Origin: Ascidiella aspersa
Lineage: Eukaryota
NCBI GenBank assembly: GCA_963924565.1
Contig: OZ004612.1
Span: forward strand, 26,908,001-26,972,000
Reading direction: 5' to 3'
DNA length: 64,000 bases
The position numbers and the translations under genes were made by a program. Under the pieces are notes generated by a model. The model was not told the origin of the DNA, did no database searches, and saw nothing but the letters and a program-made list of their open reading frames with translations. This document shows, one piece after another, positions 20,203-43,859 of this stretch (positions are counted from its first letter, which is position 1; each line of letters opens with the position of its first letter).

Positions 20203-23200
20203 ATGAACCTCAACGCATTGCATCAGTGGAAGCAGTCCAGCACCAACACCAACAATAACAATACCAGCGTTGAAGCTCGTGCAGATCGCGGCGTTCAAAA
20301 CGGCCAGACCATCGTCTTTTCTCAGAACGTGGGATTCTCACGGAGTTCAACTGGCTCGTATCAACATCCACGATCACATAACTCCAGCAAAACATACCAC
20401 ACCAGCTCTAGAACTTCTAAGAGCGCGCCAACATATTACAAGTTGCAGCAGGCGACCGCTGGTGCCTATCACTGTGAGATGCAGAACAACCAAGGTCAGA
20501 CTTTCGCCGACCAAGCAAACCAGCAAACAGGCTGCAACGTCAACCAGCAGGTGATTCAGTACAACATTAACGTGGGCAACTTGCCCGAGCCTCGTACGCA
20601 CGTGAACCAGTTGGCATGCTTACAACAACAGCAGCAACATGAACACCAGAGTATTACGCCACTGCAGCTGCAGCAAAGTAGAATGCTTAAAGGACAGTAT
20701 CCGTCTAGCACCCACAACCCAAAGTTGGCGATCCTAAACGGTCAACAGTACGTCGGCGGTGTGCGGCGCACTTTACTCGATGTATCACTGGGATCCCTCA
20801 GCACCCAGCAGTGCTTTCGAAGCAACAGCGCGGAGTTGTCCTTGGAAAACCACACAACCCAAAACAAGCACATGAAATCAGTCGACTACGAAAGAAATGC
20901 TCAGATCGATGCTGAGACTGGTAAATACCTTAACTTGCCATCCAAGACGCCTGGACCGTTTGTGAATATCGCCAAAGGACAAACAACTACCAATCAGAAA
21001 GGGCAGCGTCAACGCTCGTCGCCACCAAATCAAAAGGACAACAACACTTTCTATTACCCATCAACTGTTGCAACACAATACCAACAAACCCGCTACCAAG
21101 AAGCAGCAATACCAATGCCGAATCAACCGCCACCTGCTTATTCAACGATATCAACACCGTTCGAACAGCAACCACGACAGTATTCAACGATACCAACTCC
21201 AACCCAGCAACTTTCCCGTCAGCGTCCATTACAGTGCGCAAGGCAGCAGCCGTTCATAGAACTGCAACGCCAACAAAACAAACCTTGTTCTACTCTGCAG
21301 CAACCACAACAAACTGAAAGAGTCTCCCCACAACAAAACCAACGATTGTCTCCCCGAAGTCACCGGCGATCCCCTCAGATCCAGCAAGTATTTCCCCAAG
21401 CTCCAAATCCACAACCTCAATCTTCCCCCCAACTTCAGCAGCCATCACTTGTAGAGAAGCTGACACGTGTGGTGACTTCGGGTGAGTTAACATGTATTTT
21501 TAAAACACAAATTAGATGGATATTTGGTAATCAAGCCATAAGACCGAGATAAGAACAATATCAACGTCAGAATAAAACACAATTTGGAATAAGGCCAAAT
21601 AAGGATAGATAATGATATTATTACTGTCTAAATCGAATTAGTCCTAAATCCATCGGAATAAGACCCAAAACGTCAGAATCAGGCCTAAACAACACTTAAA
21701 CTAACCCCAAACCCCATCCCTAAGTACTTTTCACAACTTTTAACCCTCACTTTCCGACAAAGGACATAGCCTAATTGCCTCTATCTAATTTTAATAAAAT
21801 ATGACAGCATTTAAGTTAAAGTCTGTAACCCAGATATGATAAAGTTTTGTAACTTGATCATGTTTTTTCAGACAGCGACATGCGCACTGCAACAACTGGC
21901 GGCGACCATCCTTACGACTTGACTCTCGAAGACCTCGTTAGTGAAGTGAAAGGCCTAAACAAGACTAGGATAAACCTGGAACACATGTCTTTACCTCAGC
22001 AGACAACCACCAACCGGTTGTCACCTTTTAACCAAAGAAAGACGCAGAAAAACGAGAACTCTAGTGATATCCAGATTGCCAACTGCTTCTCACTGCAAGG
22101 CAATGTCAATTCGAACAGCGGCAAGAGATTAACGTCGCAGGAAGCCGCCGCAAAGACTGCAAGGAATCACAAGGTGCTGCAGTCACATTCGCCGGTTTTG
22201 GAGCCCGGAGATTCCGCCGACATGGATTTCCTGCTTTCATGCTCGAAAAATACAACAGAGGAGCGAGGAAGTGACGACCGCTTGCTGCCGCGAATTGTCG
22301 CTCGGTTCCTCGGCAAGGACGTCAGCGAAGTGAGGTCACGTGATTACGTCATGTACGCGCTGTCAGACGACCCGCGCGTCGCCGAGGCCGCCATAGCTGC
22401 GCATCTCCAAGAACGCACCAAGATGTTCGTGTGCCTAGAATTCCCGCCCATGAGTCCTTGGAACGCCGGCGCCCGTGAAGCCAAGAAGGCTTTTTTCCTT
22501 GTAAAGAACGCGGGAGACGTTACTTGCGTTGTTAACTTCTACCCTTGCACCAGTGTACGGATGGTGCTGGTTGTTTGTAGGCTGTGTCAGCAAGCCGAGA
22601 GAAGACTGCAGAATACTACATTAGTCCCCGAAGTGAATTTAACCACCACTACAAGCGAAGAGAGCCAAATCCCGATGCAGTCAGAGCTTCTAAATCCCAG
22701 CTCTGTCACAAAGCCACCAGCAGAGCAATCGTTGAACGTCCAGGCGGTTTCAAACCCGAAAACGCCCCTTACACGCCCCTCTACTATCGATCCGTTGTCC
22801 AATAGTAATCAAGCCAGGTCAAACCTTGTCAAAGATTCAGCCATTGCTAGCGACGAGCGTCGATCTTCGAATATTTTTGAGCTTTTAAATTCCAGTTTCC
22901 TCCCTGAGCCACAAGCAGAGCAAGGTTCAAACAATTCAGCCGTTTTTAGAGTGGAAACGCCTCCTACACGCCCAGCTCCTGTCAATCAACAGCAAAAGAG
23001 TCCAACGCATGAGGAAACGGAAGGACAAGGCTCAAATGTGAGTATTTCCAGCGGTGAAACGCCTCCTCTACGCCCGTCGCCCACAAAACATCAGATGAAC
23101 AACTCTATACAAGAGAAAACTGCAGAGCAAAGTAAAGACCAAGCTCCCTTGTCTTCCTCTGTCAATCAAACTCGGCCGCAATCGTGTTCTATCGAGAGCG

Positions 23201-24180
23201 AAGAAGAGAAGATGACGCGGATCCGCAAAGAGGTCGAGGCGCTGCTCAACGCCGGCAAACCGGATTTGCGGAAAGCGGCGGCGAAGCGATCGCGTGGCGA
23301 CCACGAGCTGCTCACCCTGGACCGCTTCCGGCGAAAGCGGAAGTCGCGCGGAATCGACGTCGACTCGAGAAGCACTGTAAGCGACGTCACAATTCGGGAC
23401 ATATCGTCGCCAAACGCGAAACTTCAAGATTGTGTTGTGGATCGTATTCCTTCCTCCGTAACTAACAAAATTCAGATGAGTTCCCCAACCAAAAATAATG
23501 ACGTCATATCCGAACACAATGACGTCGCAGTCGACAACGTCATTATCAAAGTGGAACGAGATGAAATTGACTACGACCTTTACCGTGAAAATAAAGCTAA
23601 TCGCTATGACGTCATATCTGGACACGATGTTACCGAGCATAGTGACGCCAAAATCCAGCAAGATGATGTCAGAATAAACTACGATGACGTCAGTGCTGAG
23701 CAAAATGGAATGAGAAGTGAACACGAAGACTTTGAAGCTAGTTACAATGAAGTCGGAGTTGAACAAGATGACGTCATTTCTGAGCACGATGACGTAGTAT
23801 CTGATCACGATGACGTCGAAACGGATTGCGATGACATTGGTGCTGATCAAGATGACGTCAGATCTCAGGAAGATGTTGTGATTAGACGCGATGACGAAAT
23901 CGTCGCTTTAGCAAAACGGAGTCCCGAAAAGGTCGCACTCAATTGCGGAAAAGTGGCGAAACGGAGCAAAGACGCGGTAAACTCGAACTTACGGAAACGG
24001 AAAAGGGCGTCGATGAGGGCCGGTTCTTGCCGCGCGCCACGCCTCGACCTCGTCTACAGGAGCTACCTCGACTCGTTGCAGCCGTCGCCAATTGTTTCTC
24101 GACAATGCGCGCCTCGTGACGTAACAATCATTCCGTGTTCTGTTCGTATTTCCGACGTTTTTTCGTTGAATGTCGCTTAA
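20203..24180 (+). CDS. Uncharacterised large, mostly disordered, probably nuclear protein, paralog 1. Exons 20203-21481 + 21872-24180, ~1195 aa
   Basis: ORFs 20203 (Q-rich) and 21880 join in frame through a phase-1 intron (TCG G|gtgagt ... ttttttcag|AC AGC GAC ATG). The same intron position occurs in both other paralogs. An in-frame TGA at 20137 supports ATG 20203 as the start. RKRKR NLS near the C-terminus. Confidence 0.85.
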
Positions 24181-29795: not shown

Positions 29796-32700
29796 ATGGA
29801 CCGCAGCGCATTACATCAGTGGCAGCAAACCAGCATCAACACCAACAATAACAATTGCGGCAGTGAAGCTCGTGCAGATCGCGGCGTTCAAAACGGCCAG
29901 ACCATCGTCTTTTCTCAGAACGTCGGATTCTCACGGAGTTCAACTGGCTCGTATCAACATCCAAGATCACACAACTCCAGCAAAGCACACTACACCAGCG
30001 CTAGAACGTCAAAGAGCGCTCCACCACATTACAAGAAGCAGCAGGCGACCGCTGGTGCCTATCACTATCAAATACGGAACAACCAAGGTCAGACTTTCGC
30101 CGACCAAACCCAAGTAAACCAGCAGACAGGCTGCAACGTCAACCATCAGGTGATCCAGTACAACATCAACGTGGGCAACTTGCCCGAGAATCGTACGCAC
30201 GTGAACCAAGTGGTATGCTTACAACAACAACAACAAGAACAGGAACAACAACATGGAAAGCAGAGTATTACGCCACTGCAGCTGCAGCAGAGTAGAATGC
30301 TGAAAGGACAGCATCCGTCTAGCGCCTACAACCCAAAGCTGGCGCCCGAAAACACTCATCAGTACTTCGGCGGATTGCGGCGAACATTGGTCGATCTGCA
30401 GCACGAATCTCTCAGCGCCCAGCAGTACTTTCGCAGCAACAGCGCGGAATTGTCTCTGGAAACCCAACCGAACAAGAACCAGTATATGAAACCCGGTGCG
30501 TACAAAAGCAGGACTCAGATCCATTCCGAGTCCGATAAATACCTTAACTTGCCATCCACGACTCCTGGACCGTTTGTGAATATCGCTAAAGGACAAACTA
30601 CCGCCAAACATAAAGTGCAGCGTCAACGCTCGTCGCCACCAAATCAACAATACGGCCATTTCTACTATTCACCAGCGGTTACAACACAATACCAACAAAC
30701 TCCCCACCAACACGCAGCAATACCAACACAGGATCAACAACTGCCACCTGCTTATTCAACGATATTAACACCGTTCGAACAGCAACCCCATCTGTATTCA
30801 ACGGTACCAACTCAAAGCCAGCAACTTTCTCCTCAGCTTCCATTACAGTGCGCAAGGCAGCAGCCGTTCATAGAACTGCAACGCCAACAAAACAAACCTT
30901 GTTCTACTCTGCAGCAACCACAACAAACTGAAAGAGTCTCCCCCCAACAAAACCAACGATCATCCCCTTCAAATCAACGTGAGTCCCTTCAGACTCAGCA
31001 AGTATCTCCCCAAGCTCCCAATCCACCTCCACAATCATCCCCTCAACTTCAACAGCCATCACTTGGAGAGCAGCTGACACGTGTGGTGACCTCTGGTGAG
31101 TTTATATGTATTTGAAAAACACAATGTATGTATATTTGATATTTAATAATATTATATGATATTTACAGTTTATTTTAAACACATTTGACTAAAATAACAT
31201 CCGAACTTGCCACTTAAAAGTTAATTTCAGTTACATTAATTTAAAAATGAATTGCCCCAATCCTTAAATCATTTTTTTAAATTTAAGTCCTAAAGATATT
31301 AAGCCGGAAATTCCAAACTTTGGTTAATAATGATAATAATTGAAACAGCGGCAGAGAACTTTCAGGTCAATTCAAATTAAACTTTTCCAAGAAAAGAAGT
31401 TCAGTGTTTTATACTAAAGTTCGCAATTTAACGTTTGCATAATTTACGAAACGTTATGTTACTCCGTGATATGCTTCGAATGCAAAACCCAATTAGGAAG
31501 AATCCCAAATATTTATACTTGTGTATTGAGGGATTACGACACGGAATTGCATTGTAACTTTATCGTATTTTTAAGACAGCAACATGCGCAGTACAACAAC
31601 GGGCGGCGACCATCCTTACGATTTGACTCTTGATGATCTCCTTAATGAAGTGGAGGGCCTAAACAAGACCAGGATAAACCTGGAAGACAGGTCTTCATCT
31701 CAGCAGACAACCAGCAACTGGTTGTCGCCTTTCAATCAAAGAAAGTCGCAAAACAACGAGATCTGCGACGACATCCAGATCGTCAACTGCTTCTCGCTGC
31801 AAGGCAAGGTCGATTCGAACAGCGGCAAGAGATTAACGTCGCAGGAAGTCGCCGCAAAGACAGCAAGGAACCACAAGGTGCTGCAGTCACATTCGCCGGC
31901 TTTAGAACCCGGATACTCCGACGACGCGAATTCCCTCCTTTTATTCTCAACAAATTCTACAAAGGAGAAAGGTAGTGACGACCGCTTGCTGCCGCGAATC
32001 GTCGCCCGGTTCCTAGGCAAGGACGTCAGTGACGTGAGGTCACGCGATTACGTCATGTACGCGCTGTCAGACGACCCGCGCGTCGCCGAGGCCACCATAG
32101 CTGCGCATTCCCAAGAATCGACCGAGATGTTCGTGTGCCTAGAATTCCCGCCCAGAAGTCGTTGGAGCGGCGGCGCCCGTGAAGCTAAAAAGGCTTTCTG
32201 TCCTGTAAAGAACGTGGGCGACGTTTCTTGCATTGTCAACTTGTACTCATGCACCAGTGTACGGATGGTACTGGTTGTTGTTAGGATGAGTCAACGCGCC
32301 GAGAGAATGGTTCAGCATACTAGACCAATCCCTCAAGTGGATTTAACAACCTCTAGAAGCGATGATGGCAAAACCCTGATGCAGTCAGAAATTCCACAGC
32401 CCAGCTCTGTCCCACAGCCACCAGCAGAGCAATCGTTGAACGTCCAGGCGGTTTCAAACCCCAAAACGCCCCTTACACGCCCCTCTACTATCGATCCGTT
32501 GTCCAATAGTAATCAAGCCAGGCTAGACCTTGACGCGGATTCAACCATTGCTAGCGACGAACGTCTATCTTCGAATATTTTTGAGCTTCTAATGCCCAAT
32601 TCTATTCCAGAGCCACCAGTAGAGCAAACTTTAAACACCCCAGCTATTTTTAGAGTGGAAACGCCCCCTACACGCCCAGCTCCTGTCAATGAACAGCAAA

Positions 32701-33929
32701 AGAGTCCAACGCCTAAAGAAACCGAAGAACAGGGTTCAAAGATGGAGGTTTCCAGCAGTGAAACACCTTCTGTACGCCCATCGCCCGTCGAACACCAGTT
32801 GAACCACTTTATACAAGCGAAGACATCAGATCAGCATTCCCAGCCGCCACCTGTCAATCAAACAATACAAGAAAGAGCAGCCGAGCAAAGTGAAGACAAA
32901 TCTCAGTTGGCCTCGCCTGTCGATCAATCTGCGCCGCCATCTTGTTCTATCGAGAGCGAAGAAGAGAAGATGACGCGGATCCGCAAAGAGGTCGAGGCGC
33001 TGCTCAACGCCGGCAAACCGGATTTGCGGAAAGCGGCGGCGAAGCGATCGCGTGGCGACCCCGAGCTGCTCACCCTGGACCGCTTCCGGCGAAAGTGGAA
33101 GTCGCGCGGAATCGACCTCTACTCGAGAAGCGCCGTAAGTGACGTCACAATTCGGGAAAAATCGTCAACTGTGAAACATCGGGTTGATGAACGTATTCTC
33201 TCAGTAACTGATAAAGGCCACTCGAGTTCCCCAACCAAGAATGATGTCGTCATATCCCAACACACTGGCGTCACAGCCCAAAACGTCATCGTTAAAGTGG
33301 AACGAGATGAAATAGACTACGACCTTTACCGCGGCACTACAGCCAATCGTTATGACATCACATCGACACACTATGATACCGAACATGGTGACGCGATAGC
33401 CCTGCAAGATGACGACAGAATAGAGTTCTTTGACGTCAGGGATGGGCACAATGACATCAGAACTGAGCACGAAGACTTCGGAGCTAATTACAATGAAGTC
33501 CGAGTTGAGCAAAATGACGTCATTTCTGAGCACGATGACGTCATTTCTGATCGCGATGACTTCGAAACGGATTGTGATGACATTGGTGCTGAAAAAGATG
33601 ACGTCAGATCTCAGCACGATGGTGTGATCAGGTGCGATGACGAAATGGTCTCTTTAGCAAAACAGACTCCCGGTAACGCCTCACTAAATTGCGGAAAAGC
33701 GGCAAAACGGAGCGAAAACGCGGTAAACGCGAACTTGCGGAAACGGAAAAGGGCGTCGATGCGGGCCGGTTCTTGCCGCGCGCCACGCCTCGACCTCGTC
33801 TACAGGAGCTACCTCGACTCGTTGCAGCCTTCGCCCATTGTTCCTCGACAATGCGCGCCTCATGACGTAACAATCATTCCGTGTTCTGTTCGTATTTCCG
33901 ACATTTTTTCGTTGAACACTGTCGCTTAA
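29796..33929 (+). CDS. Paralog 2 of the same family. Exons 29796-31095 + 31576-33929, ~1217 aa
   Basis: Clear end-to-end protein similarity to paralog 1. Phase-1 intron TCT G|gtgagt ... tttttaag|AC AGC AAC ATG keeps the frame. Confidence 0.85.
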
Positions 33930-39419: not shown

Positions 39420-42400
39420 ATGGACATTAACTCGGTAAATCAGTGGCAACATTCGGCCAACAACAGCAACAACAACAGTCACATCATCAGTGAAAGTCAA
39501 GCACATCGCGGCGCACAAAGCAACCCGGCCATCTTTTCGCAGAACGTGGGCTTTTCTAGGAGCTATACACGTCCCTTTCAACCTCCCGCCCATTTCAACA
39601 ACTCTAGCAGAAACCACGATTTTTGCACGTGGAACAACGCAGAATACAACCGGCAGCAGGCCAATTGTAGTCGGCAGTGGCAGAACAACAATGGCCAAAC
39701 CTTCGCCGACCAAACCCAACTAAACCAGCAGACAGGCTACAACGCCAACCAGCAGGTGATCCAGTACAACATCAACGTGGGCAACTTGTCCGACCCGCAA
39801 ACCCACGTGAACCAGTTGGTATGCTTACAAAAACAGCAGCAGCAACAACAACAACATGAACCGCACAGTACTACCCCACTGCAGCTCCAGCACAAAATGA
39901 TGAATGGCCAGCTTTATGAAGTCTACAATCAAAACCCGGTGTCTCTAAACACTCATCAGTTCGTCGGCGGTGTGCGGCACACTATAGCTGATGTACATCA
40001 TGGAACCCTCAGCACCCAGCCGTATTTTCGCAGCAACAACGCGGATTTGTCGCTGAAAAACCACCCGAAAAGTAACCAACACATGAAACCGGTTAAGTAT
40101 GGAAGCAATGTCTGTTATGAGGACAATAAACACATTAACTTGTCGTCCACGAAGCCCTCACCGGTTGTGAAAATCTGCGAACGACAATGTGCTTCTCATA
40201 GAGGGCAGCGTCATCGCTCGTTGCCATCAAATCAACAGCACAGTACTTTTCACTATCGAGCAGCGGTTCCAACACAATACCAACCATCACCCTATCAACA
40301 CGCAGCAATACCAACGCAGAATCAACAACTGCCATCTGCTTATTCAACGATAGCAACTCCGTTCGAACAGCAACCCCGACAGTATTCAACGATACCAACT
40401 CAAAGTCAGCAACTTCCATTGCAGTCTCCATTAAAGCAGCAGTTGTTTAGAGAGCTTCAACAAAAACAAAATCAACCGCGCTATACTCTACAGCAATCAC
40501 AACAAACTGAAGAAATCTCCCCCCAACAAAACCAACGATTCTCCCATACAAATCAACAGGAATCCTTTATAAACCAGCGAGTATCTCCCCAAGTTCCAAA
40601 TCCACCTCCACAATCATCCCCTCGACTTCAACAGGCACGACTTGGTGAGCAGTTGACACTTGTGTTGTCTTCCGGTAATTTATCTTAAGTGCTTAAAACT
40701 AAAAATAAATAGATATTCGACATTAACTATTATTTGCTTGATTAATCTGATGATGGCATAAGAAATTGCCGAAACGTTTGAAAATAAAGCATGTCGCTTT
40801 TAACGTCTATTTGGGCCGTTATTTTCACCATTAAACTTATATCCTATTTATTTGTTAAATTAAAAGTCACTATTTAAAAAAATATGACTTAAATTAATGA
40901 TATATTTTCTTCGATTAAAGGAAGGAATCCCGAAACTACATTTAAACTCTAACACAATTAAATGGATTTGCTAATACCCCTGCTCAGTTGGTAGAGCGAC
41001 GGTCCCGACTTGACCGGAGGTCGTGAGTTCGAACCTCACTGCAGGCTACTTGTTTTCCTAGCCTGCCCTGCTTGCATCATTGATCGACAGATTTGACGAA
41101 GAGTCTGCAATGGCTTTCGGTATACTATTGTTAATACATTGTAAGCATAACTGAACAATATCACGATATACCCTAAACTTTAAACAAATATTAGCGAATT
41201 TAAATTAAGGTCGTTAGGTTAAGGCGGTTTCCAGGTTAAGGCGGTTTCCAAGTTTTTGTGTGTTTGGGGGGATGGACTTTTGTGTTCAGAGCTCGGTACT
41301 GTTGTTTTCTTAACTTCATGTGTTACTCTTTCAGACAGCGACGTGCACAGCACAACAACACGTGCTGACTTTCCTCGCGATTTGACTCTAGACAACCTAA
41401 TAGAGGAAGTGGAAAACTTAAGCAAGCCACAAATAAATCCGAAGGACAAGTCTCAGCATCAGAAGAAGTCGCCGAACAACGAGAACTGCGACGACATCCA
41501 GAACGCCAGCTACATCGCGTTGCAAGGCAAGGTCGATTTGAACAGGTGCAATAGATTAACGTCGCATGAAGCCGCCGCAAAGACTGCAAGAAACAAAACG
41601 TTGCGACAGTCACATTCGCTGGATTTAGAGCCCCAAGACACGATCAACACAACTTTCATGCGATCATGCTCGACAAATACAACAAAGGAGCGAGGTTGCG
41701 ACGACCTCGTGCTGCCGCCAACCGTCTGTCGGTTCCTGGGAAACGACGTCAGACACGTGAGGTCACGCGATTACGTCATGTACTTGTTGTCAAACGACCC
41801 GCGGGTCGCCGAGGCCGCCATAGCTGCGCATCTCCAAGAACGCTTCAAGATGTTCGTGTGCGTCGAATTTCCGCCTAGGAGTCCTTTAAGCGACGGTAGA
41901 GAAACTAAGAAGGCTTTCTGCCTTGTAAAGAACGCGGGCGACGTTTCTTTTATCGTCAACTTGTACTCATGCACCAGTGTACGGATGGTGCTGGTAGTTC
42001 GTAGGATGAACCAGTCCGCCAAAAGAACAGTTCAAAATAATAGACCAATCCCTGAATTGGTTTTAACCACAACAGCAAGGGACAAACGCGAATCACCGAT
42101 TCCATCAGGTTATTTACTGCCCAGTTATTTCCCAGATCTACCAACTGAGCTAGCTATAAATGTCCAGGCGGTTCCAAACCAGGAAACGCCCCCAACACGC
42201 CCCTCGCCCACCAAAGAGCAGCTGAATAATTCCATAAATGAAATTAAAGCGGGGCAAACTGAACCACAAGCTCCGCAGAACTCGTCCATCGTCCACTTCC
42301 TGGGCAATGACTTCAGCGAAGTGAGGTCACGCGATTACGTCATGTACGCACTGTCAGACGACCCGCGCGTCGCTGAGGCCGCCATAGCTGCGCATCTCCA

Positions 42401-43859
42401 CGAAAGCACCAAGATGTTCGTGTGCGTCGAATTCCCGCCCAGGAGTCCGTGGAGCGCCGGCGCCCGTGAAGTACCGAAGAGCTACTTCCTTGTAAAGAAC
42501 GTTCGCGATGTCTTGCGTATCGTCAACTTCTACCCATGCACTAGTGTACGGACAGTGCTGGTCGTTTGTAGGATGAGCCAGAACACCGAGATAAAAGTAC
42601 AACAGACCAGGTCATTCCCTGAACTGGATTTAACAGACGAGGGCAAATCACCGATTCTGTCAGATCTTGTAAGGCACATCCCGGCCTCTGGTCCACCGGC
42701 TGAGCAAGTTACAAGCGTATCCGGGGATGCGCCCCACACAAGCCCCTCTTCCAGCAATCAACAAACCAAGAGTTCAGCCCGGGAAAACACATCACAACGA
42801 GTAAGCCAAAGTTCAAAGGTCGTCGTTTACAGCGCAGAACCGCCCCCTACATGCCCAGGTCCTGTTAATCAACAGCAAAGCAGTCCAAACCCTGAGGAAA
42901 TAAAACGACAAGATTCAAATGTGAATGTTTCAAGCGCAGAACAGCCCACTACTCGCCTCTCACCAACAAAATTGCCGCTAATTAACTCTATACAAGAAAC
43001 TACAGTGGAGCAAAGTGAAGACCAAGTTCACTTGTCCTCATCTGTCAATCAAACTCGGCCGCCATCTTGTTCTATTGAAAGCGAAGAAGAGAAGATGACG
43101 CGGATCCGCAAAGAGGTCGAGGCGCTGCTCAACGCTGGCAAACCGGATTTGCGGAAAGCGGCGGCGAAGCGATCGCGTGGCGACCACGAGCCTCCCACCC
43201 TGGACCGCTTCTGGCGAAAGTGGAAATCGCGCGAAATCGACGTCGACTCGAGAAGCACCATAAGTGACGTCACAATCCGGGACGAAACTCCGCCAACCGC
43301 AAAACTACAAGATTGTGTTCAGAAACGCGTCCTTTCCGCTCCAGCAAAAGAAAAAGCCCAGTCGAGTTCCCCCAAAATAAATGATGACGTCACATCTGAA
43401 CGCGATGACGTCAAGATCGAAAGCGTGATCATCAGGGTGGATCCCAATGATCTCGACTATGACCTTCACCGCTACCTCAATGACAATCCAGTTGACGTTA
43501 AATCTGGTCTTAATGACGTCATAGGCGGGCAAGATGACGCGGGAGCCGATCAAGATGACGTCACAGCAAGACGCGATGACGAAACTAAGCGGTTAAATCC
43601 CGAAATGGCCGCGCTCAATTACGGAAAATCAGCGAATCAAAGCAAAGACGCCGAAATTGTTAACTTACGGAAACGGAAAAGGGCGTCGATGAGAGCCGGT
43701 TCTTGCCGCGCGCCACGCCTCGACCTCGTCTACAGGAGCTACCTCGACTCGTTGCAGCCGTCGCCCATTGTTCCTCGACAATGCGTGCCTCGTGACGTAA
43801 CAATCATTCCATGCTCCGTTCGCATTTCCGACATTTTTTCGTTAAATAATATCGCTTAA
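39420..43859 (+). CDS. Paralog 3 of the same family, more divergent, with the central domain duplicated. Exons 39420-40674 + 41335-43859, ~1259 aa
   Basis: Similarity to paralogs 1 and 2. Phase-1 intron TCC G|gtaatt ... ctttcag|AC AGC GAC GTG. The track's N-terminal extension from 41256 is intronic. Confidence 0.85.
40743..40783 (+). ncRNA. Minimal hammerhead-like motif in the intron of paralog 3
   Basis: CUGAUGA-U-GGCA-loop-UGCC-GAAA-CGUU. Stem I is poorly paired, so it is probably inactive. Confidence 0.45.
40975..41125 (+). mobile_element. tRNA-derived SINE in the intron of paralog 3
   Basis: A-box-like GCTCAGTTGGT and B-box GAGTTCGAACC, with no complete cloverleaf. Homologous to 62297-62520 (-) and 34810-34950. 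Confidence 0.75.

What the first reader, a model, noticed from the sequence alone, without database searches (positions are those of the whole stretch)
24133..24168. Conserved C-terminal motif suggests the triplicated proteins are ATF7IP/SETDB1-type silencing adaptors
Seen: all three paralogs end in PCSVRISD[VI]FSL, and copies 1 and 2 carry a second similar motif, IQI[AV]NCFSL (~22069-22095, ~31773-31800). They also have IKVE/VKVE/VKIE SUMO-consensus sites, an RKRKR NLS and long Q/P-rich disordered regions. Known, from memory: the ITEIFSL-type motif of MBD1 and related motifs in ZMYM2, ZNF518 and RESF1 bind the FNIII domain of ATF7IP/MCAF1, the SETDB1 cofactor, and CxVxI resembles PxVxL HP1-chromoshadow ligands. 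Inference: a lineage-specific, tandemly amplified and rapidly diverging family of heterochromatin/transposon-silencing adaptors. Short motifs can match by chance.
Basis: inference. Interest (0 to 1): 0.75.

Follow-up and report, generated by a model that had tools for sequence, protein, structure and literature searches.

The report
Conserved tail motif, orphan sea-squirt genes
Six neighbouring sea-squirt genes with no known relatives encode long, mostly floppy nuclear proteins whose last dozen residues are kept by selection and resemble the peptide that mammalian proteins use to dock onto the gene-silencing cofactor ATF7IP; binding itself is untested.

Summary
All three window genes end in PCSVRISD[VI]FSL at the stated coordinates. 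Copies 1 and 2 also carry IQI[AV]NCFSL.

The family has six members, not three, all within about 120 kb of one contig. Five of them keep the tail. The sixth has a stop codon and a frameshift exactly there.

The tail is conserved at the protein level. Its synonymous divergence equals the gene background (pS 0.355 against 0.319), while its non-synonymous divergence is low (pN 0.086 against 0.190). The 47 codons just upstream are instead conserved at the nucleotide level (pS 0.085), which I cannot explain.

The tail fits the published ATF7IP-FNIII-interacting motif (FAM) at every mutation-defined position, I-x-x-[IV]-x-S-L. It lies in a predicted disordered region next to an RKRKR signal. The genome also encodes an ATF7IP-type fn3_4 domain.

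No homologue turned up among 1.84 billion representative proteins, and no Pfam family or known fold matched. Orthologue conservation and binding could therefore not be tested. The HP1 (PxVxL) reading is weak.

My verdict is a genuine, selected C-terminal motif in an orphan nuclear family. ATF7IP docking is the best single hypothesis, at about 0.35.

The scan had already noted this family in the adjacent window (s1-802088). It had also noted an ATF7IP-like motif elsewhere in this genome (s1-802447).

The parts
20203..21481 (+). Copy 1, Q-rich exon 1 (from the first ATG of the ORF to the inferred donor G|GTGAGT)
   Evidence: ORF. Donor read. Phase 1 and the same position in all copies. Not confirmed by RNA reads (one search shows no joint). 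Upstream exons were not examined.
21872..24180 (+). Copy 1, exon 2 (inferred acceptor ttttttcag| at 21869-21871, through the TAA stop)
   Evidence: The frame continues from exon 1 (G + AC = Asp).
22069..22095 (+). Copy 1, N-terminal FSL motif IQIANCFSL
   Evidence: It fits I-x-x-[IV]-x-S-L except for Cys at the I/V position.
22306..22575 (+). Copy 1, about 90-residue alpha/beta domain, the only confidently folded part
   Evidence: AF2 gave mean pLDDT 65.4 and a beta-alpha-beta-beta-alpha-beta order. There was no Pfam hit, no Foldseek hit at E<=0.001 and a best VIA Z of 5.0. pN/pS is 0.37.
23182..23301 (+). Copy 1, invariant block SCSIESEEEKMTRIRKEVEALLNAGKPDLRKAAAKRSRGD (predicted helix)
   Evidence: Alignment. 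The helix reaches pLDDT about 82. pS is only 0.076.
23545..23556 (+). Copy 1, IKVE SUMO-consensus-type site inside the acidic DDV-repeat region
   Evidence: A psi-K-x-E stands at the aligned column in 4 of 5 intact copies. Copy 3 has R there and a VKIE upstream. About one such site per protein is expected by chance (my estimate).
23989..24129 (+). Copy 1, C-block LRKRKRAS...QCAPRDVTI including the RKRKR nuclear-localisation-type signal (23992-24006)
   Evidence: Nearly invariant in all 6 copies, at synonymous sites too (pS 0.085). Exactly 6 copies in the genome.
24133..24168 (+). Copy 1, tail PCSVRISDVFSL (the finding), 3 residues before the stop
29796..31095 (+). Copy 2, exon 1
   Evidence: donor G|GTGAGT.
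31576..33929 (+). Copy 2, exon 2
31773..31799 (+). Copy 2, N-terminal motif IQIVNCFSL
33879..33914 (+). Copy 2, tail PCSVRISDIFSL
39420..40674 (+). Copy 3, exon 1 (donor G|GTAATT at the homologous place)
41335..43859 (+). Copy 3, exon 2, with the alpha/beta domain duplicated internally (41733-41999 and 42297-42566) and a degenerate N motif (41496-41522, IQNASYIAL)
43809..43844 (+). Copy 3, tail PCSVRISDIFSL

Best explanation
The window holds three of six clustered, two-exon genes of a sea-squirt-restricted orphan family. Each encodes a nuclear protein of about 1,200 residues. It has a Q-rich exon 1, one small alpha/beta domain, long disordered linkers and an acidic DDV-repeat region with a psi-K-x-E site. 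It ends with an invariant basic/helical C-block and then the tail ...C-S-[VI]-R-I-[SF]-D-[VI]-F-S-L-N. The tail is a functional short linear motif. Its most likely job is to dock onto the C-terminal FNIII (fn3_4) domain of the host ATF7IP orthologue, as the FAM motifs of MBD1, MGA and ZMYM2/4 do in mammals. The protein would then bring ATF7IP-SETDB1 (H3K9 methylation) to whatever the rest of the protein recognises. The N-terminal IQI[AV]NCFSL may be a weaker second site, as ZMYM2 has two. The SUMO-type site may add a second contact. What is shown: the motif, its selection, its disordered and nuclear-type context, the six-gene cluster, and the presence of the fn3_4 domain. What is inferred: binding, nuclear localisation, SETDB1 recruitment and any target.
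For: The tail is present in 5 of 5 intact copies and fits I-x-x-[IV]-x-S-L. The positions that match are those whose Arg substitution abolishes ATF7IP binding in MBD1, ZMYM2 and MGA (PMC7706265 and PMC12303078, passages). Chance expectation is 0.05 per 1,200 residues for the loose pattern and 2.5e-5 for I[ST][DE][IV]FSL, computed post hoc. Selection acts on the protein: tail pS 0.355 and pN 0.086 against 0.319 and 0.190 for the whole exon. Six of the 9 amino-acid-conserved tail codons carry synonymous differences. The only copy without the tail (L012) has a TGA at the Cys codon plus a 1-nt deletion, and it also has a large internal deletion. In the AF2 model the tail lies in a region of pLDDT <50, that is, not buried in a confident fold. 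RKRKR is invariant in 6 of 6 copies. The host fn3_4 domain scores 62.7 bits in the genome scan, and 64.4 and 27.1 bits for the two exons against a cut-off of 27.1. The frame stops right after it. In long open frames, the tight motif was found only in this family.
Against: No binding evidence of any kind exists. FAM has been defined only in mouse and human proteins, and only two papers in the library use the term. I could not see the published alignment, because the figure is not held and the supplements are closed. My consensus therefore rests on the MGA 9-mer, the printed 'ITEFSL' and the mutated residue numbers. No orthologues were available, so deep conservation is untested. The SETDB1-binding Pfam domain of ATF7IP (PF16788) was not detected in the genome. 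That PF16794 marks ATF7IP is my recollection, not a tool result. The N motif has Cys at the critical I/V position and is lost in copy 3 and altered in L012. One paralogue also has a chance loose match (IKEVESL) inside a predicted helix, which shows the loose pattern is not specific. Expression evidence is thin: a few RNA reads, and the splice junction was not seen.
Confidence: 0.35

Rival explanations
1. The tail is a functional docking motif, but for a partner other than ATF7IP. The partner could be an unknown nuclear protein, an HP1 chromoshadow dimer through C-S-V-R-I, SUMO through DVTII, or a C-terminus-reading domain. On this view the likeness to FAM is coincidental.
For: Protein-level selection on the tail says nothing about the partner. 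Short hydrophobic strand motifs are used by many domains. The family is an orphan, so its partners may be lineage-specific too.
Against: C-S-[VI]-R-I lacks the Pro and the Leu of P-x-V-x-L, and its central V is I in one paralogue. DVTII is DVTIT or DVTIN in the other three copies, so a SUMO-interacting core is not conserved. Residues after FSL vary in number and kind (NVA, NTVA, NNIA, NNVA), which argues against a motif read from the free C-terminus. The 7-residue match to the MBD1-type FAM is much tighter than chance.
Confidence: 0.3
2. The tail is not a separate motif. It is the end of a larger C-terminal module (C-block plus tail, about 65 residues) that folds on binding or self-associates. 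Concerted evolution (gene conversion) keeps that module uniform among the copies.
For: The 47 codons before the tail are invariant in 6 of 6 copies, with pS 0.085 against 0.32 overall. AF2 draws helices there at low confidence. A second block shows the same nucleotide-level conservation (pS 0.076).
Against: The regime changes sharply at the tail, where pS rises to 0.355. Among amino-acid-conserved codons, 6 of 9 in the tail carry synonymous differences against 6 of 43 in the C-block (p = 0.0027). The tail is therefore maintained differently from the C-block. No confident fold is predicted (pLDDT 33-47).
Confidence: 0.15
3. The tail is a trafficking or stability signal, such as a hydrophobic nuclear-export-type signal (I-xx-[IV]-xx-L-x-[VI]) or a C-terminal degron.
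For: The spacing of the hydrophobic residues in ISD[VI]FSLN[V] loosely resembles export-signal patterns (my reading, from memory). The motif also sits at the extreme C-terminus.
Against: The fourth hydrophobic position is not kept: NVA, NTVA and NNIA shift it. No tool here tests this idea.
Confidence: 0.1
4. There is no function. The shared ending only reflects recent duplication or gene conversion.
For: The neighbouring C-block shows that something, conversion or constraint, does homogenise nucleotides in this gene end.
Against: Synonymous divergence in the tail is at background level (4-7 synonymous differences in about 13 synonymous sites for the deeper pairs), while the amino acids are kept. 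The copies are old (pS 0.21-0.38 between pairs).
Confidence: 0.05

Closest known systems
[quoted passage not shown] 2020, PMC7706265; MGA study, PMC12303078)
   Same: It shares the heptad I-x-x-[IV]-x-S-L, with hydrophobic residues at the positions whose Arg substitution kills ATF7IP binding. As with ZMYM2, a second, weaker copy may be present. The carrier is nuclear-type and the motif sits in a disordered context.
   Different: The carrier is an orphan protein with no zinc finger, MBD, T-box or other known DNA-binding domain. The motif is 3-4 residues from the C-terminus. The organism is a tunicate, where this interaction has never been reported (0 papers with ATF7IP and ascidian). Binding is untested.
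KRAB zinc-finger proteins with TRIM28/KAP1-SETDB1 (review passage in PMC13108219; their amplification and arms race are recalled)
   Same: It is a lineage-specific, tandemly amplified, fast-evolving gene family. On the proposed reading, a constant effector-docking element is paired with a more variable remainder.
   Different: There are no KRAB and no zinc fingers. There are six genes, not hundreds. The docking would be to ATF7IP rather than TRIM28. The one folded domain is the conserved part (pN/pS 0.37), not the variable one.
HP1 chromoshadow ligands (P-x-V-x-L)
   Same: A hydrophobic x-V-x-[LI] core (C-S-V-R-I) sits directly before the FAM-like heptad.
   Different: The Pro and the Leu of the canonical motif are absent, and the central V is I in one paralogue. 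The resemblance is weak.
SUMO-assisted recruitment of MCAF1/ATF7IP by MBD1 (Uchimura et al. 2006, seen only as reference 119 of PMC13108219; content recalled)
   Same: A psi-K-x-E site lies in an acidic region of the same protein that carries the FAM-like motif.
   Different: SUMOylation is not shown. One such site per protein is expected by chance. The aligned site is K-to-R in copy 3.

Membership tests
FAM-bearing ATF7IP adaptors | A sequence of the type I-x-x-[IV]-x-S-L, with I/V and L at the positions whose Arg substitution abolishes binding | tested here: met
   The tails read ISDVFSL, ISDIFSL (three copies) and IFDVFSL, so 5 of 5 intact copies fit. The consensus was taken from passages of PMC7706265 and PMC12303078. 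The published alignment figure and the supplements were not visible.
FAM-bearing ATF7IP adaptors | Direct binding to the ATF7IP FNIII domain that is lost on I/V-to-R and L-to-R mutation | not testable with these tools
No experiment was possible.
FAM-bearing ATF7IP adaptors | An ATF7IP-type FNIII domain encoded by the same organism | tested here: met
   PF16794 scored 62.7 bits at G000:C2:37437066-37437203(-). The two exons scored 64.4 and 27.1 bits against a cut-off of 27.1, and the stop comes right after the domain. That PF16794 is the ATF7IP C-terminal domain is recalled. PF16788 was not found.
FAM-bearing ATF7IP adaptors | The motif is accessible (disordered) and sits in a nuclear protein | tested here: inconclusive
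   The tail lies in a pLDDT <50 region of a shallow-alignment AF2 model. RKRKR is invariant. Localisation is not measured.
FAM-bearing ATF7IP adaptors | The motif is conserved in orthologues | not testable with these tools
   There were no homologues outside this genome: 0 hits from 8,000 scored candidates, and 1 spurious repeat hit in 1.84 billion representatives. Organism B contigs are 97-100% identical, too close to inform.
HP1 chromoshadow-domain ligands (PxVxL) | P-x-V-x-L core | tested here: not met
   The core reads C-S-V-R-I in 4 copies and C-S-I-R-I in 1. The consensus is recalled.
SUMO-interacting motif | A conserved hydrophobic core [VIL]-x-[VIL]-[VIL] with acidic flank | tested here: not met
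   D-V-T-I-I occurs only in the three window copies. The others read DVTIT or DVTIN. The consensus is recalled.
Any Pfam family or known fold | A significant profile or structural match | tested here: not met
   Pfam gave 0 hits above cut-off for 6 ORFs. The only listed hit was Cnl2_NKP2 at 12.4 bits against a cut-off of 27. Foldseek found 0 matches at E<=0.001. The best VIA-wide Z was 5.0. The Atlas gave no usable hit twice.

The most novel reading that the evidence does not exclude
A tunicate-specific, tandemly amplified, fast-evolving family of adaptors plugs an orphan alpha/beta domain into the ancient ATF7IP-SETDB1 heterochromatin machinery. It would do so through one or two FAM-type peptides, perhaps helped by SUMO. 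That would be a KRAB-ZFP-like solution invented independently outside vertebrates. On this reading the effector-docking end is held constant by a mix of protein-level selection (the tail) and nucleotide-level homogenisation (the C-block), while the disordered body diverges.
Probability: 0.2. Interest if true: 0.75.

Novelty: new variant of a known kind. Interest (0 to 1): 0.45.

Why it matters
FAM-FNIII docking is so far described only for a handful of mammalian proteins. If the tail binds ATF7IP, it would show that this docking is older than vertebrates. It would also show that new, lineage-specific proteins can acquire it, giving a handle on how SETDB1 is targeted in a chordate that lacks KRAB-ZFPs. 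The prediction is concrete and cheap to test: a 20-residue peptide, one small domain and two point mutants. If it fails, the family still offers a clean case of an orphan gene cluster with a selected C-terminal peptide. It also has two coding blocks conserved at synonymous sites for no known reason.

Tried and rejected
Pfam on the six ORFs gave nothing above cut-off.

The word-based homologue search with exon 2 of copy 2 scored 8,000 candidates, and none reached E<=0.001. The profile search of 1.84 billion representatives with the six-copy alignment returned 1 hit. That hit, P0001, is a GH[NY]DVKT repeat protein matching only the acidic DDV-repeat region, so I rejected it.

The ESM Atlas gave no usable hit for the domain or for the last 90 residues. 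Fold searches of the domain model found nothing convincing. Foldseek's best E-value was 0.055, and the best VIA-wide Z was 5.0 at rmsd 10. Y-family polymerase little-finger domains and designed ferredoxin-like proteins recur among the weak rows, which fits a generic beta-alpha-beta-beta-alpha-beta sandwich only.

I considered an RNA structure as the cause of the nucleotide-level conservation of the C-block and rejected it. The fold z-score was +1.5, with 188 of 200 shuffles folding at least as well, and Rfam had no match over 19500-44500. I also rejected a dispersed element as the cause, because the C-block plus tail DNA has exactly 6 copies in the genome.

I ran genome-wide pattern scans for other carriers of the tight motif. 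The broad pattern was swamped by a repeat: 391 matches against 200 for the control. The narrower pattern gave 32 matches against 18 for the control. I examined 30 of those 32 as loci. Four are this family. Eight are a repeat copy with the same 20 letters (seven in 16-residue frames, two in 47- and 54-residue frames counted among them as listed). Ten end in F rather than L, one of them inside a giant RING-containing open frame. The remaining FSL-ending matches lie in open frames of 10-135 residues that do not look coding. So no other candidate carrier was found, although short exons would escape this test.

I tried to confirm the host gene as ATF7IP beyond the fn3_4 domain. PF16788 was not found. 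There was no ORF of 100 residues or more in the 10 kb fetched. A PDB search with the last fn3_4 exon found only FNDC3A at E = 0.026, so no solved ATF7IP FNIII or complex was reached. A paper search for PF16794 was useless. The Fujita 2003 MBD1/MCAF paper (PMC152570) is not held.

RNA evidence is thin. In run X5, of which about 6 in 100 was read, 87 reads were laid. Most fell on an intron repeat, and 70 of the 87 were only 90-95% alike. No splice joint was seen. Seven reads carry a loose end identical to the paralogue in L003, so that paralogue is transcribed. The CAC insertion behind 24170 seen in X1 equals the copy 2 sequence. It may be a cross-laid copy 2 contig, so I do not count it as an allele.

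The weak match on contig C5 (E = 6.3e-4) was not followed. The supplements and figures of PMC7706265, which hold the FAM alignment and the interactor table, could not be seen and bear on the exact consensus.

The spliced protein was never joined. All searches, alignments and folds used exon 2 (or exon 1) alone.
Full report
WHAT IS THERE

The window is G000:C6:26908001-26972000 of a 308.6-Mb genome. I did not verify that label.

Between 20.2 and 43.9 kb lie three tandem + strand genes at a period of about 9.7 kb. GC rises to 0.45-0.51 in them, against 0.33-0.40 around them. Each gene has two long open frames:
- a Q-rich frame of about 430 codons
- a frame of 766-867 codons

The two frames are linked by an inferred phase-1 intron. 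In copy 1 the donor is TCG G|GTGAGT after 21481, and the acceptor is ttttttcag| before 21872. The homologous sites are 31095/31576 in copy 2 and 40674/41335 in copy 3. RNA reads did not confirm the junction. Everything below rests on exon 2, or on exon 1 alone.

THE OBSERVATION

The stretch 24133-24168 encodes PCSVRISDVFSL, followed by N-V-A and the stop. Copies 2 and 3 end in PCSVRISDIFSL plus NTVA and NNIA.

A six-frame search of the whole genome with exon 2 of copy 2 gave 17 matches. Sixteen of them fall in six places within about 120 kb of contig C6: two minus-strand genes upstream of the window, the three window genes, and one gene downstream. The seventeenth is a weak match on C5 (E = 6.3e-4), which I did not follow. 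The DNA of the C-terminal 196 bases has exactly 6 copies in the genome.

The tails of the other copies are as follows:
- L008 copy: INSCSVRISDIFSLNNVA
- L003 copy: ITPCSIRIFDVFSLNNVA
- L012 copy: a TGA in place of the Cys codon, plus a 1-nt deletion in the F-S codons

The L012 copy also lacks about 90 residues of the middle region, and its N motif reads ...CFSA. So 5 of 6 copies keep the tail. Four of 6 keep the N motif intact. Copy 3 lost its N motif through five clustered non-synonymous point changes with no indel.

IS THE CONSERVATION MEANINGFUL?

I computed Nei-Gojobori proportions on a codon alignment of the six exon-2 sequences, pooled over the 15 non-independent pairs.

| Region | pS | pN | pN/pS |
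|---|---|---|---|
| Whole exon 2 | 0.319 | 0.190 | 0.59 |
| Disordered linker | - | - | 0.72 |
| Disordered middle region | - | - | 0.66 |
| Alpha/beta domain | - | - | 0.37 |
| Last 18 codons (tail) | 0.355 | 0.086 | 0.24 |

The tail has background synonymous divergence, so its amino acids are held by selection on the protein. The DNA alignment shows synonymous differences at the P, C, S, R, D, I, F and L codons of the tail.

By column, among the five intact copies, the 14 tail codons split into 3 invariant, 6 synonymous-only and 5 non-synonymous. The disordered background splits 50/38/290 (Fisher p = 0.0016).

The 47 codons just upstream (LRKRKRASMRAGSCRAPRLDLVYRSYLDSLQPSPIV...DVTI) behave differently. 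They are invariant in 6 of 6 copies, and their synonymous sites are nearly invariant too (pS 0.085). The 40-residue block SCSIESEEEK...RGD does the same (pS 0.076). Among amino-acid-conserved codons, 6 of 9 in the tail vary synonymously, against 6 of 43 in the C-block (p = 0.0027).

I could not explain this nucleotide-level conservation:
- The C-block RNA folds no better than shuffles (z = +1.5).
- Rfam has no match.
- The stretch is not part of a repeat.

Short-tract gene conversion retained by selection, or some unknown nucleotide constraint, remains open.

WHAT THE PROTEINS ARE

- Pfam finds nothing above cut-off in any of the six ORFs.
- The word-indexed search scored 8,000 candidates and found none at E<=0.001.
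- An HMMER profile of the six copies, run against 1.84 billion representative proteins, returned one hit. It is a GH[NY]DVKT repeat protein that matches only the acidic repeat region, which I reject.
- The ESM Atlas gave no usable hit for the domain or for the C-terminal 90 residues.

AlphaFold2 on an alignment of the seven copies of the folded-looking region (copy 3 has two) gives a modest model. Mean pLDDT is 65.4, and the order of elements is helix, then beta-alpha-beta-beta-alpha-beta. Foldseek against the PDB finds nothing at E<=0.001. VIA-align over 48,161 chains finds nothing better than Z 5.0. This fits a generic two-layer alpha/beta sandwich and assigns no function.

AlphaFold2 on the whole exon 2 of copy 2 leaves 673 of 783 residues below pLDDT 50. 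Only the domain and one helix in the invariant middle block (about 82) have any confidence. The C-block and tail score 33-47. With only six sequences in the alignment, this is weak evidence. It is nonetheless consistent with a mostly disordered protein whose tail is exposed.

THE ATF7IP READING

Tsusaka et al. 2020 (PMC7706265; abstract and passages read) pulled down partners of the ATF7IP FNIII domain. They found 'ITEFSL'-like sequences in MBD1, ZMYM2 (two), ZMYM4, ZFP518A and MGA, and named them FAM. They showed that Arg substitution of the I/V and the L abolishes binding (ZMYM2 V187/L190 and V217/L220; MBD1 I576/L579 from earlier work).

The MGA study (PMC12303078, passages) gives the MGA FAM as IVNVTSLAA. 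Changing it to RVNRTSRAA destroys binding. From these passages the key pattern is I-x-x-[IV]-x-S-L.

The tail I-[SF]-D-[VI]-F-S-L fits this pattern in 5 of 5 intact copies.

With the family's own composition, the loose pattern is expected 0.05 times per 1,200 residues. The tight form I[ST][DE][IV]FSL is expected 2.5e-5 times. Both figures are post hoc. One paralogue also has a chance loose match (IKEVESL) in a predicted helix. The N motif fits except for Cys at the I/V position.

The host has the partner domain. PF16794 (fn3_4) matches one place in the genome at 62.7 bits. The two adjacent exons score 64.4 and 27.1 bits against a cut-off of 27.1, and the frame stops right after the domain. That PF16794 is the C-terminal domain of ATF7IP is my recollection.

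Three attempts to go further did not succeed:
- PF16788, the SETDB1-binding region, was not found.
- The fetched 10 kb had only small exons.
- No solved ATF7IP FNIII structure was reached with the exon fragment.

A scan of the genome for the tight motif gave 32 matches against 18 for the reversed control, and I examined 30 of them. Four are this family. Eight are a repeat copy with the same 20 letters. Ten end in F rather than L, one of them inside a giant RING-containing frame. The rest sit in open frames of 10-135 residues that do not look coding. No other candidate carrier emerged, though short exons would be missed.

WHAT IS WEAK OR AGAINST

- Nothing here measures or predicts binding.
- FAM is known only from mouse and human. 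Only 2 papers in the library use the term, and none links ATF7IP with ascidians.
The organism B contigs are 97-100% identical and therefore uninformative.
- The HP1 idea fails the canonical consensus: the core is C-S-[VI]-R-I.
- The SIM-like DVTII is confined to the three window copies.
- A psi-K-x-E site is expected about once per protein by chance, and it is K-to-R at the aligned place in copy 3.
- Expression evidence is thin. Of 87 RNA reads laid from about 6% of run X5, most hit an intron repeat. The few exon reads lie with the first mate on the minus strand, which fits a + strand RNA in a common stranded library. Seven reads match the L003 paralogue exactly.

VERDICT

This is a six-gene orphan cluster encoding mostly disordered, probably nuclear proteins, with a C-terminal peptide under protein-level purifying selection.

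The best single mechanism is FAM-type docking onto the ATF7IP fn3_4 domain (confidence 0.35). Almost as likely is another partner (0.30). A larger C-terminal module (0.15), a trafficking or stability signal (0.10) and no function (0.05) follow.

If the ATF7IP reading holds, it is a new variant of a known kind of interaction, in an unexpected lineage and carrier. The test is cheap and well defined.

The scan had already noted the family in the neighbouring window (s1-802088), its folded domain (s1-805339), and an ATF7IP-like motif in another protein of this genome (s1-802447, not tested here).

Noticed in passing
window 23989-24129, 33735-33875, 43665-43805 (C-block) and 23182-23301, 32940-33059, 43065-43184 (middle block): Two coding blocks are conserved at synonymous sites in all six paralogues (pS 0.085 and 0.076 against 0.32 for the exon). 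Flanking codons, including the tail, show normal synonymous divergence. No stable RNA fold (z = +1.5), no Rfam match and no extra genomic copies explain this.
   Followed up: partly
L012:1780-1900 (G000:C6, about 27002540-27002660): The sixth paralogue has a TGA in place of the tail's Cys codon and a 1-nt deletion in the F-S codons. It also has an internal deletion of about 90 residues and an L-to-A change in the N motif. Its alpha/beta domain still looks constrained (pN 0.056, pS 0.203 against its sister copy). It is either a young pseudogene or a tail-less variant.
   Followed up: partly
window 41733-41999 and 42297-42566: Copy 3 carries an internal duplication of the alpha/beta domain with its linker. 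It has also lost the N-terminal FSL motif through five clustered non-synonymous point changes (41496-41522).
   Followed up: partly
window 21470-21763 (intron of copy 1): This is a very high-copy repeat. Contig word depth reaches 32,811-155,568, against about 50-100 in the flanks, in the two runs that look like DNA. Most of the RNA reads laid also fall here. It is probably a short dispersed element.
   Followed up: no
G000:C2:23917959-23945691 and other places on C1 and C2: The 20-mer ATTTGTGAAATTTTCAGATT recurs at spacings of about 1.35-2.8 kb in long arrays. This suggests a tandem repeat or gene array of about 1.4-kb units.
   Followed up: no
L056 (G000:C3:30729140-30732159): An open frame of at least 1,006 residues runs off both ends of the locus. 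It contains a RING-type Cys pattern and an ISEIFSF heptad inside what looks like folded sequence. It may be the 'giant protein' of note s1-802447, but I could not check that.
   Followed up: no
eight places, e.g. G000:C1:19349329, C3:7465223, C6:17948067: A dispersed repeat contains ATTTCTGATGTTTTCTCTCT, which reads ISDVFSL in one frame. That frame is open for only 16-54 residues. I take it as a chance match in non-coding repeat DNA.
   Followed up: yes
window 1-64000: CpG observed/expected is 1.11 over the whole window and 1.23-1.31 in the three second exons. There is no CpG depletion here.
   Followed up: no
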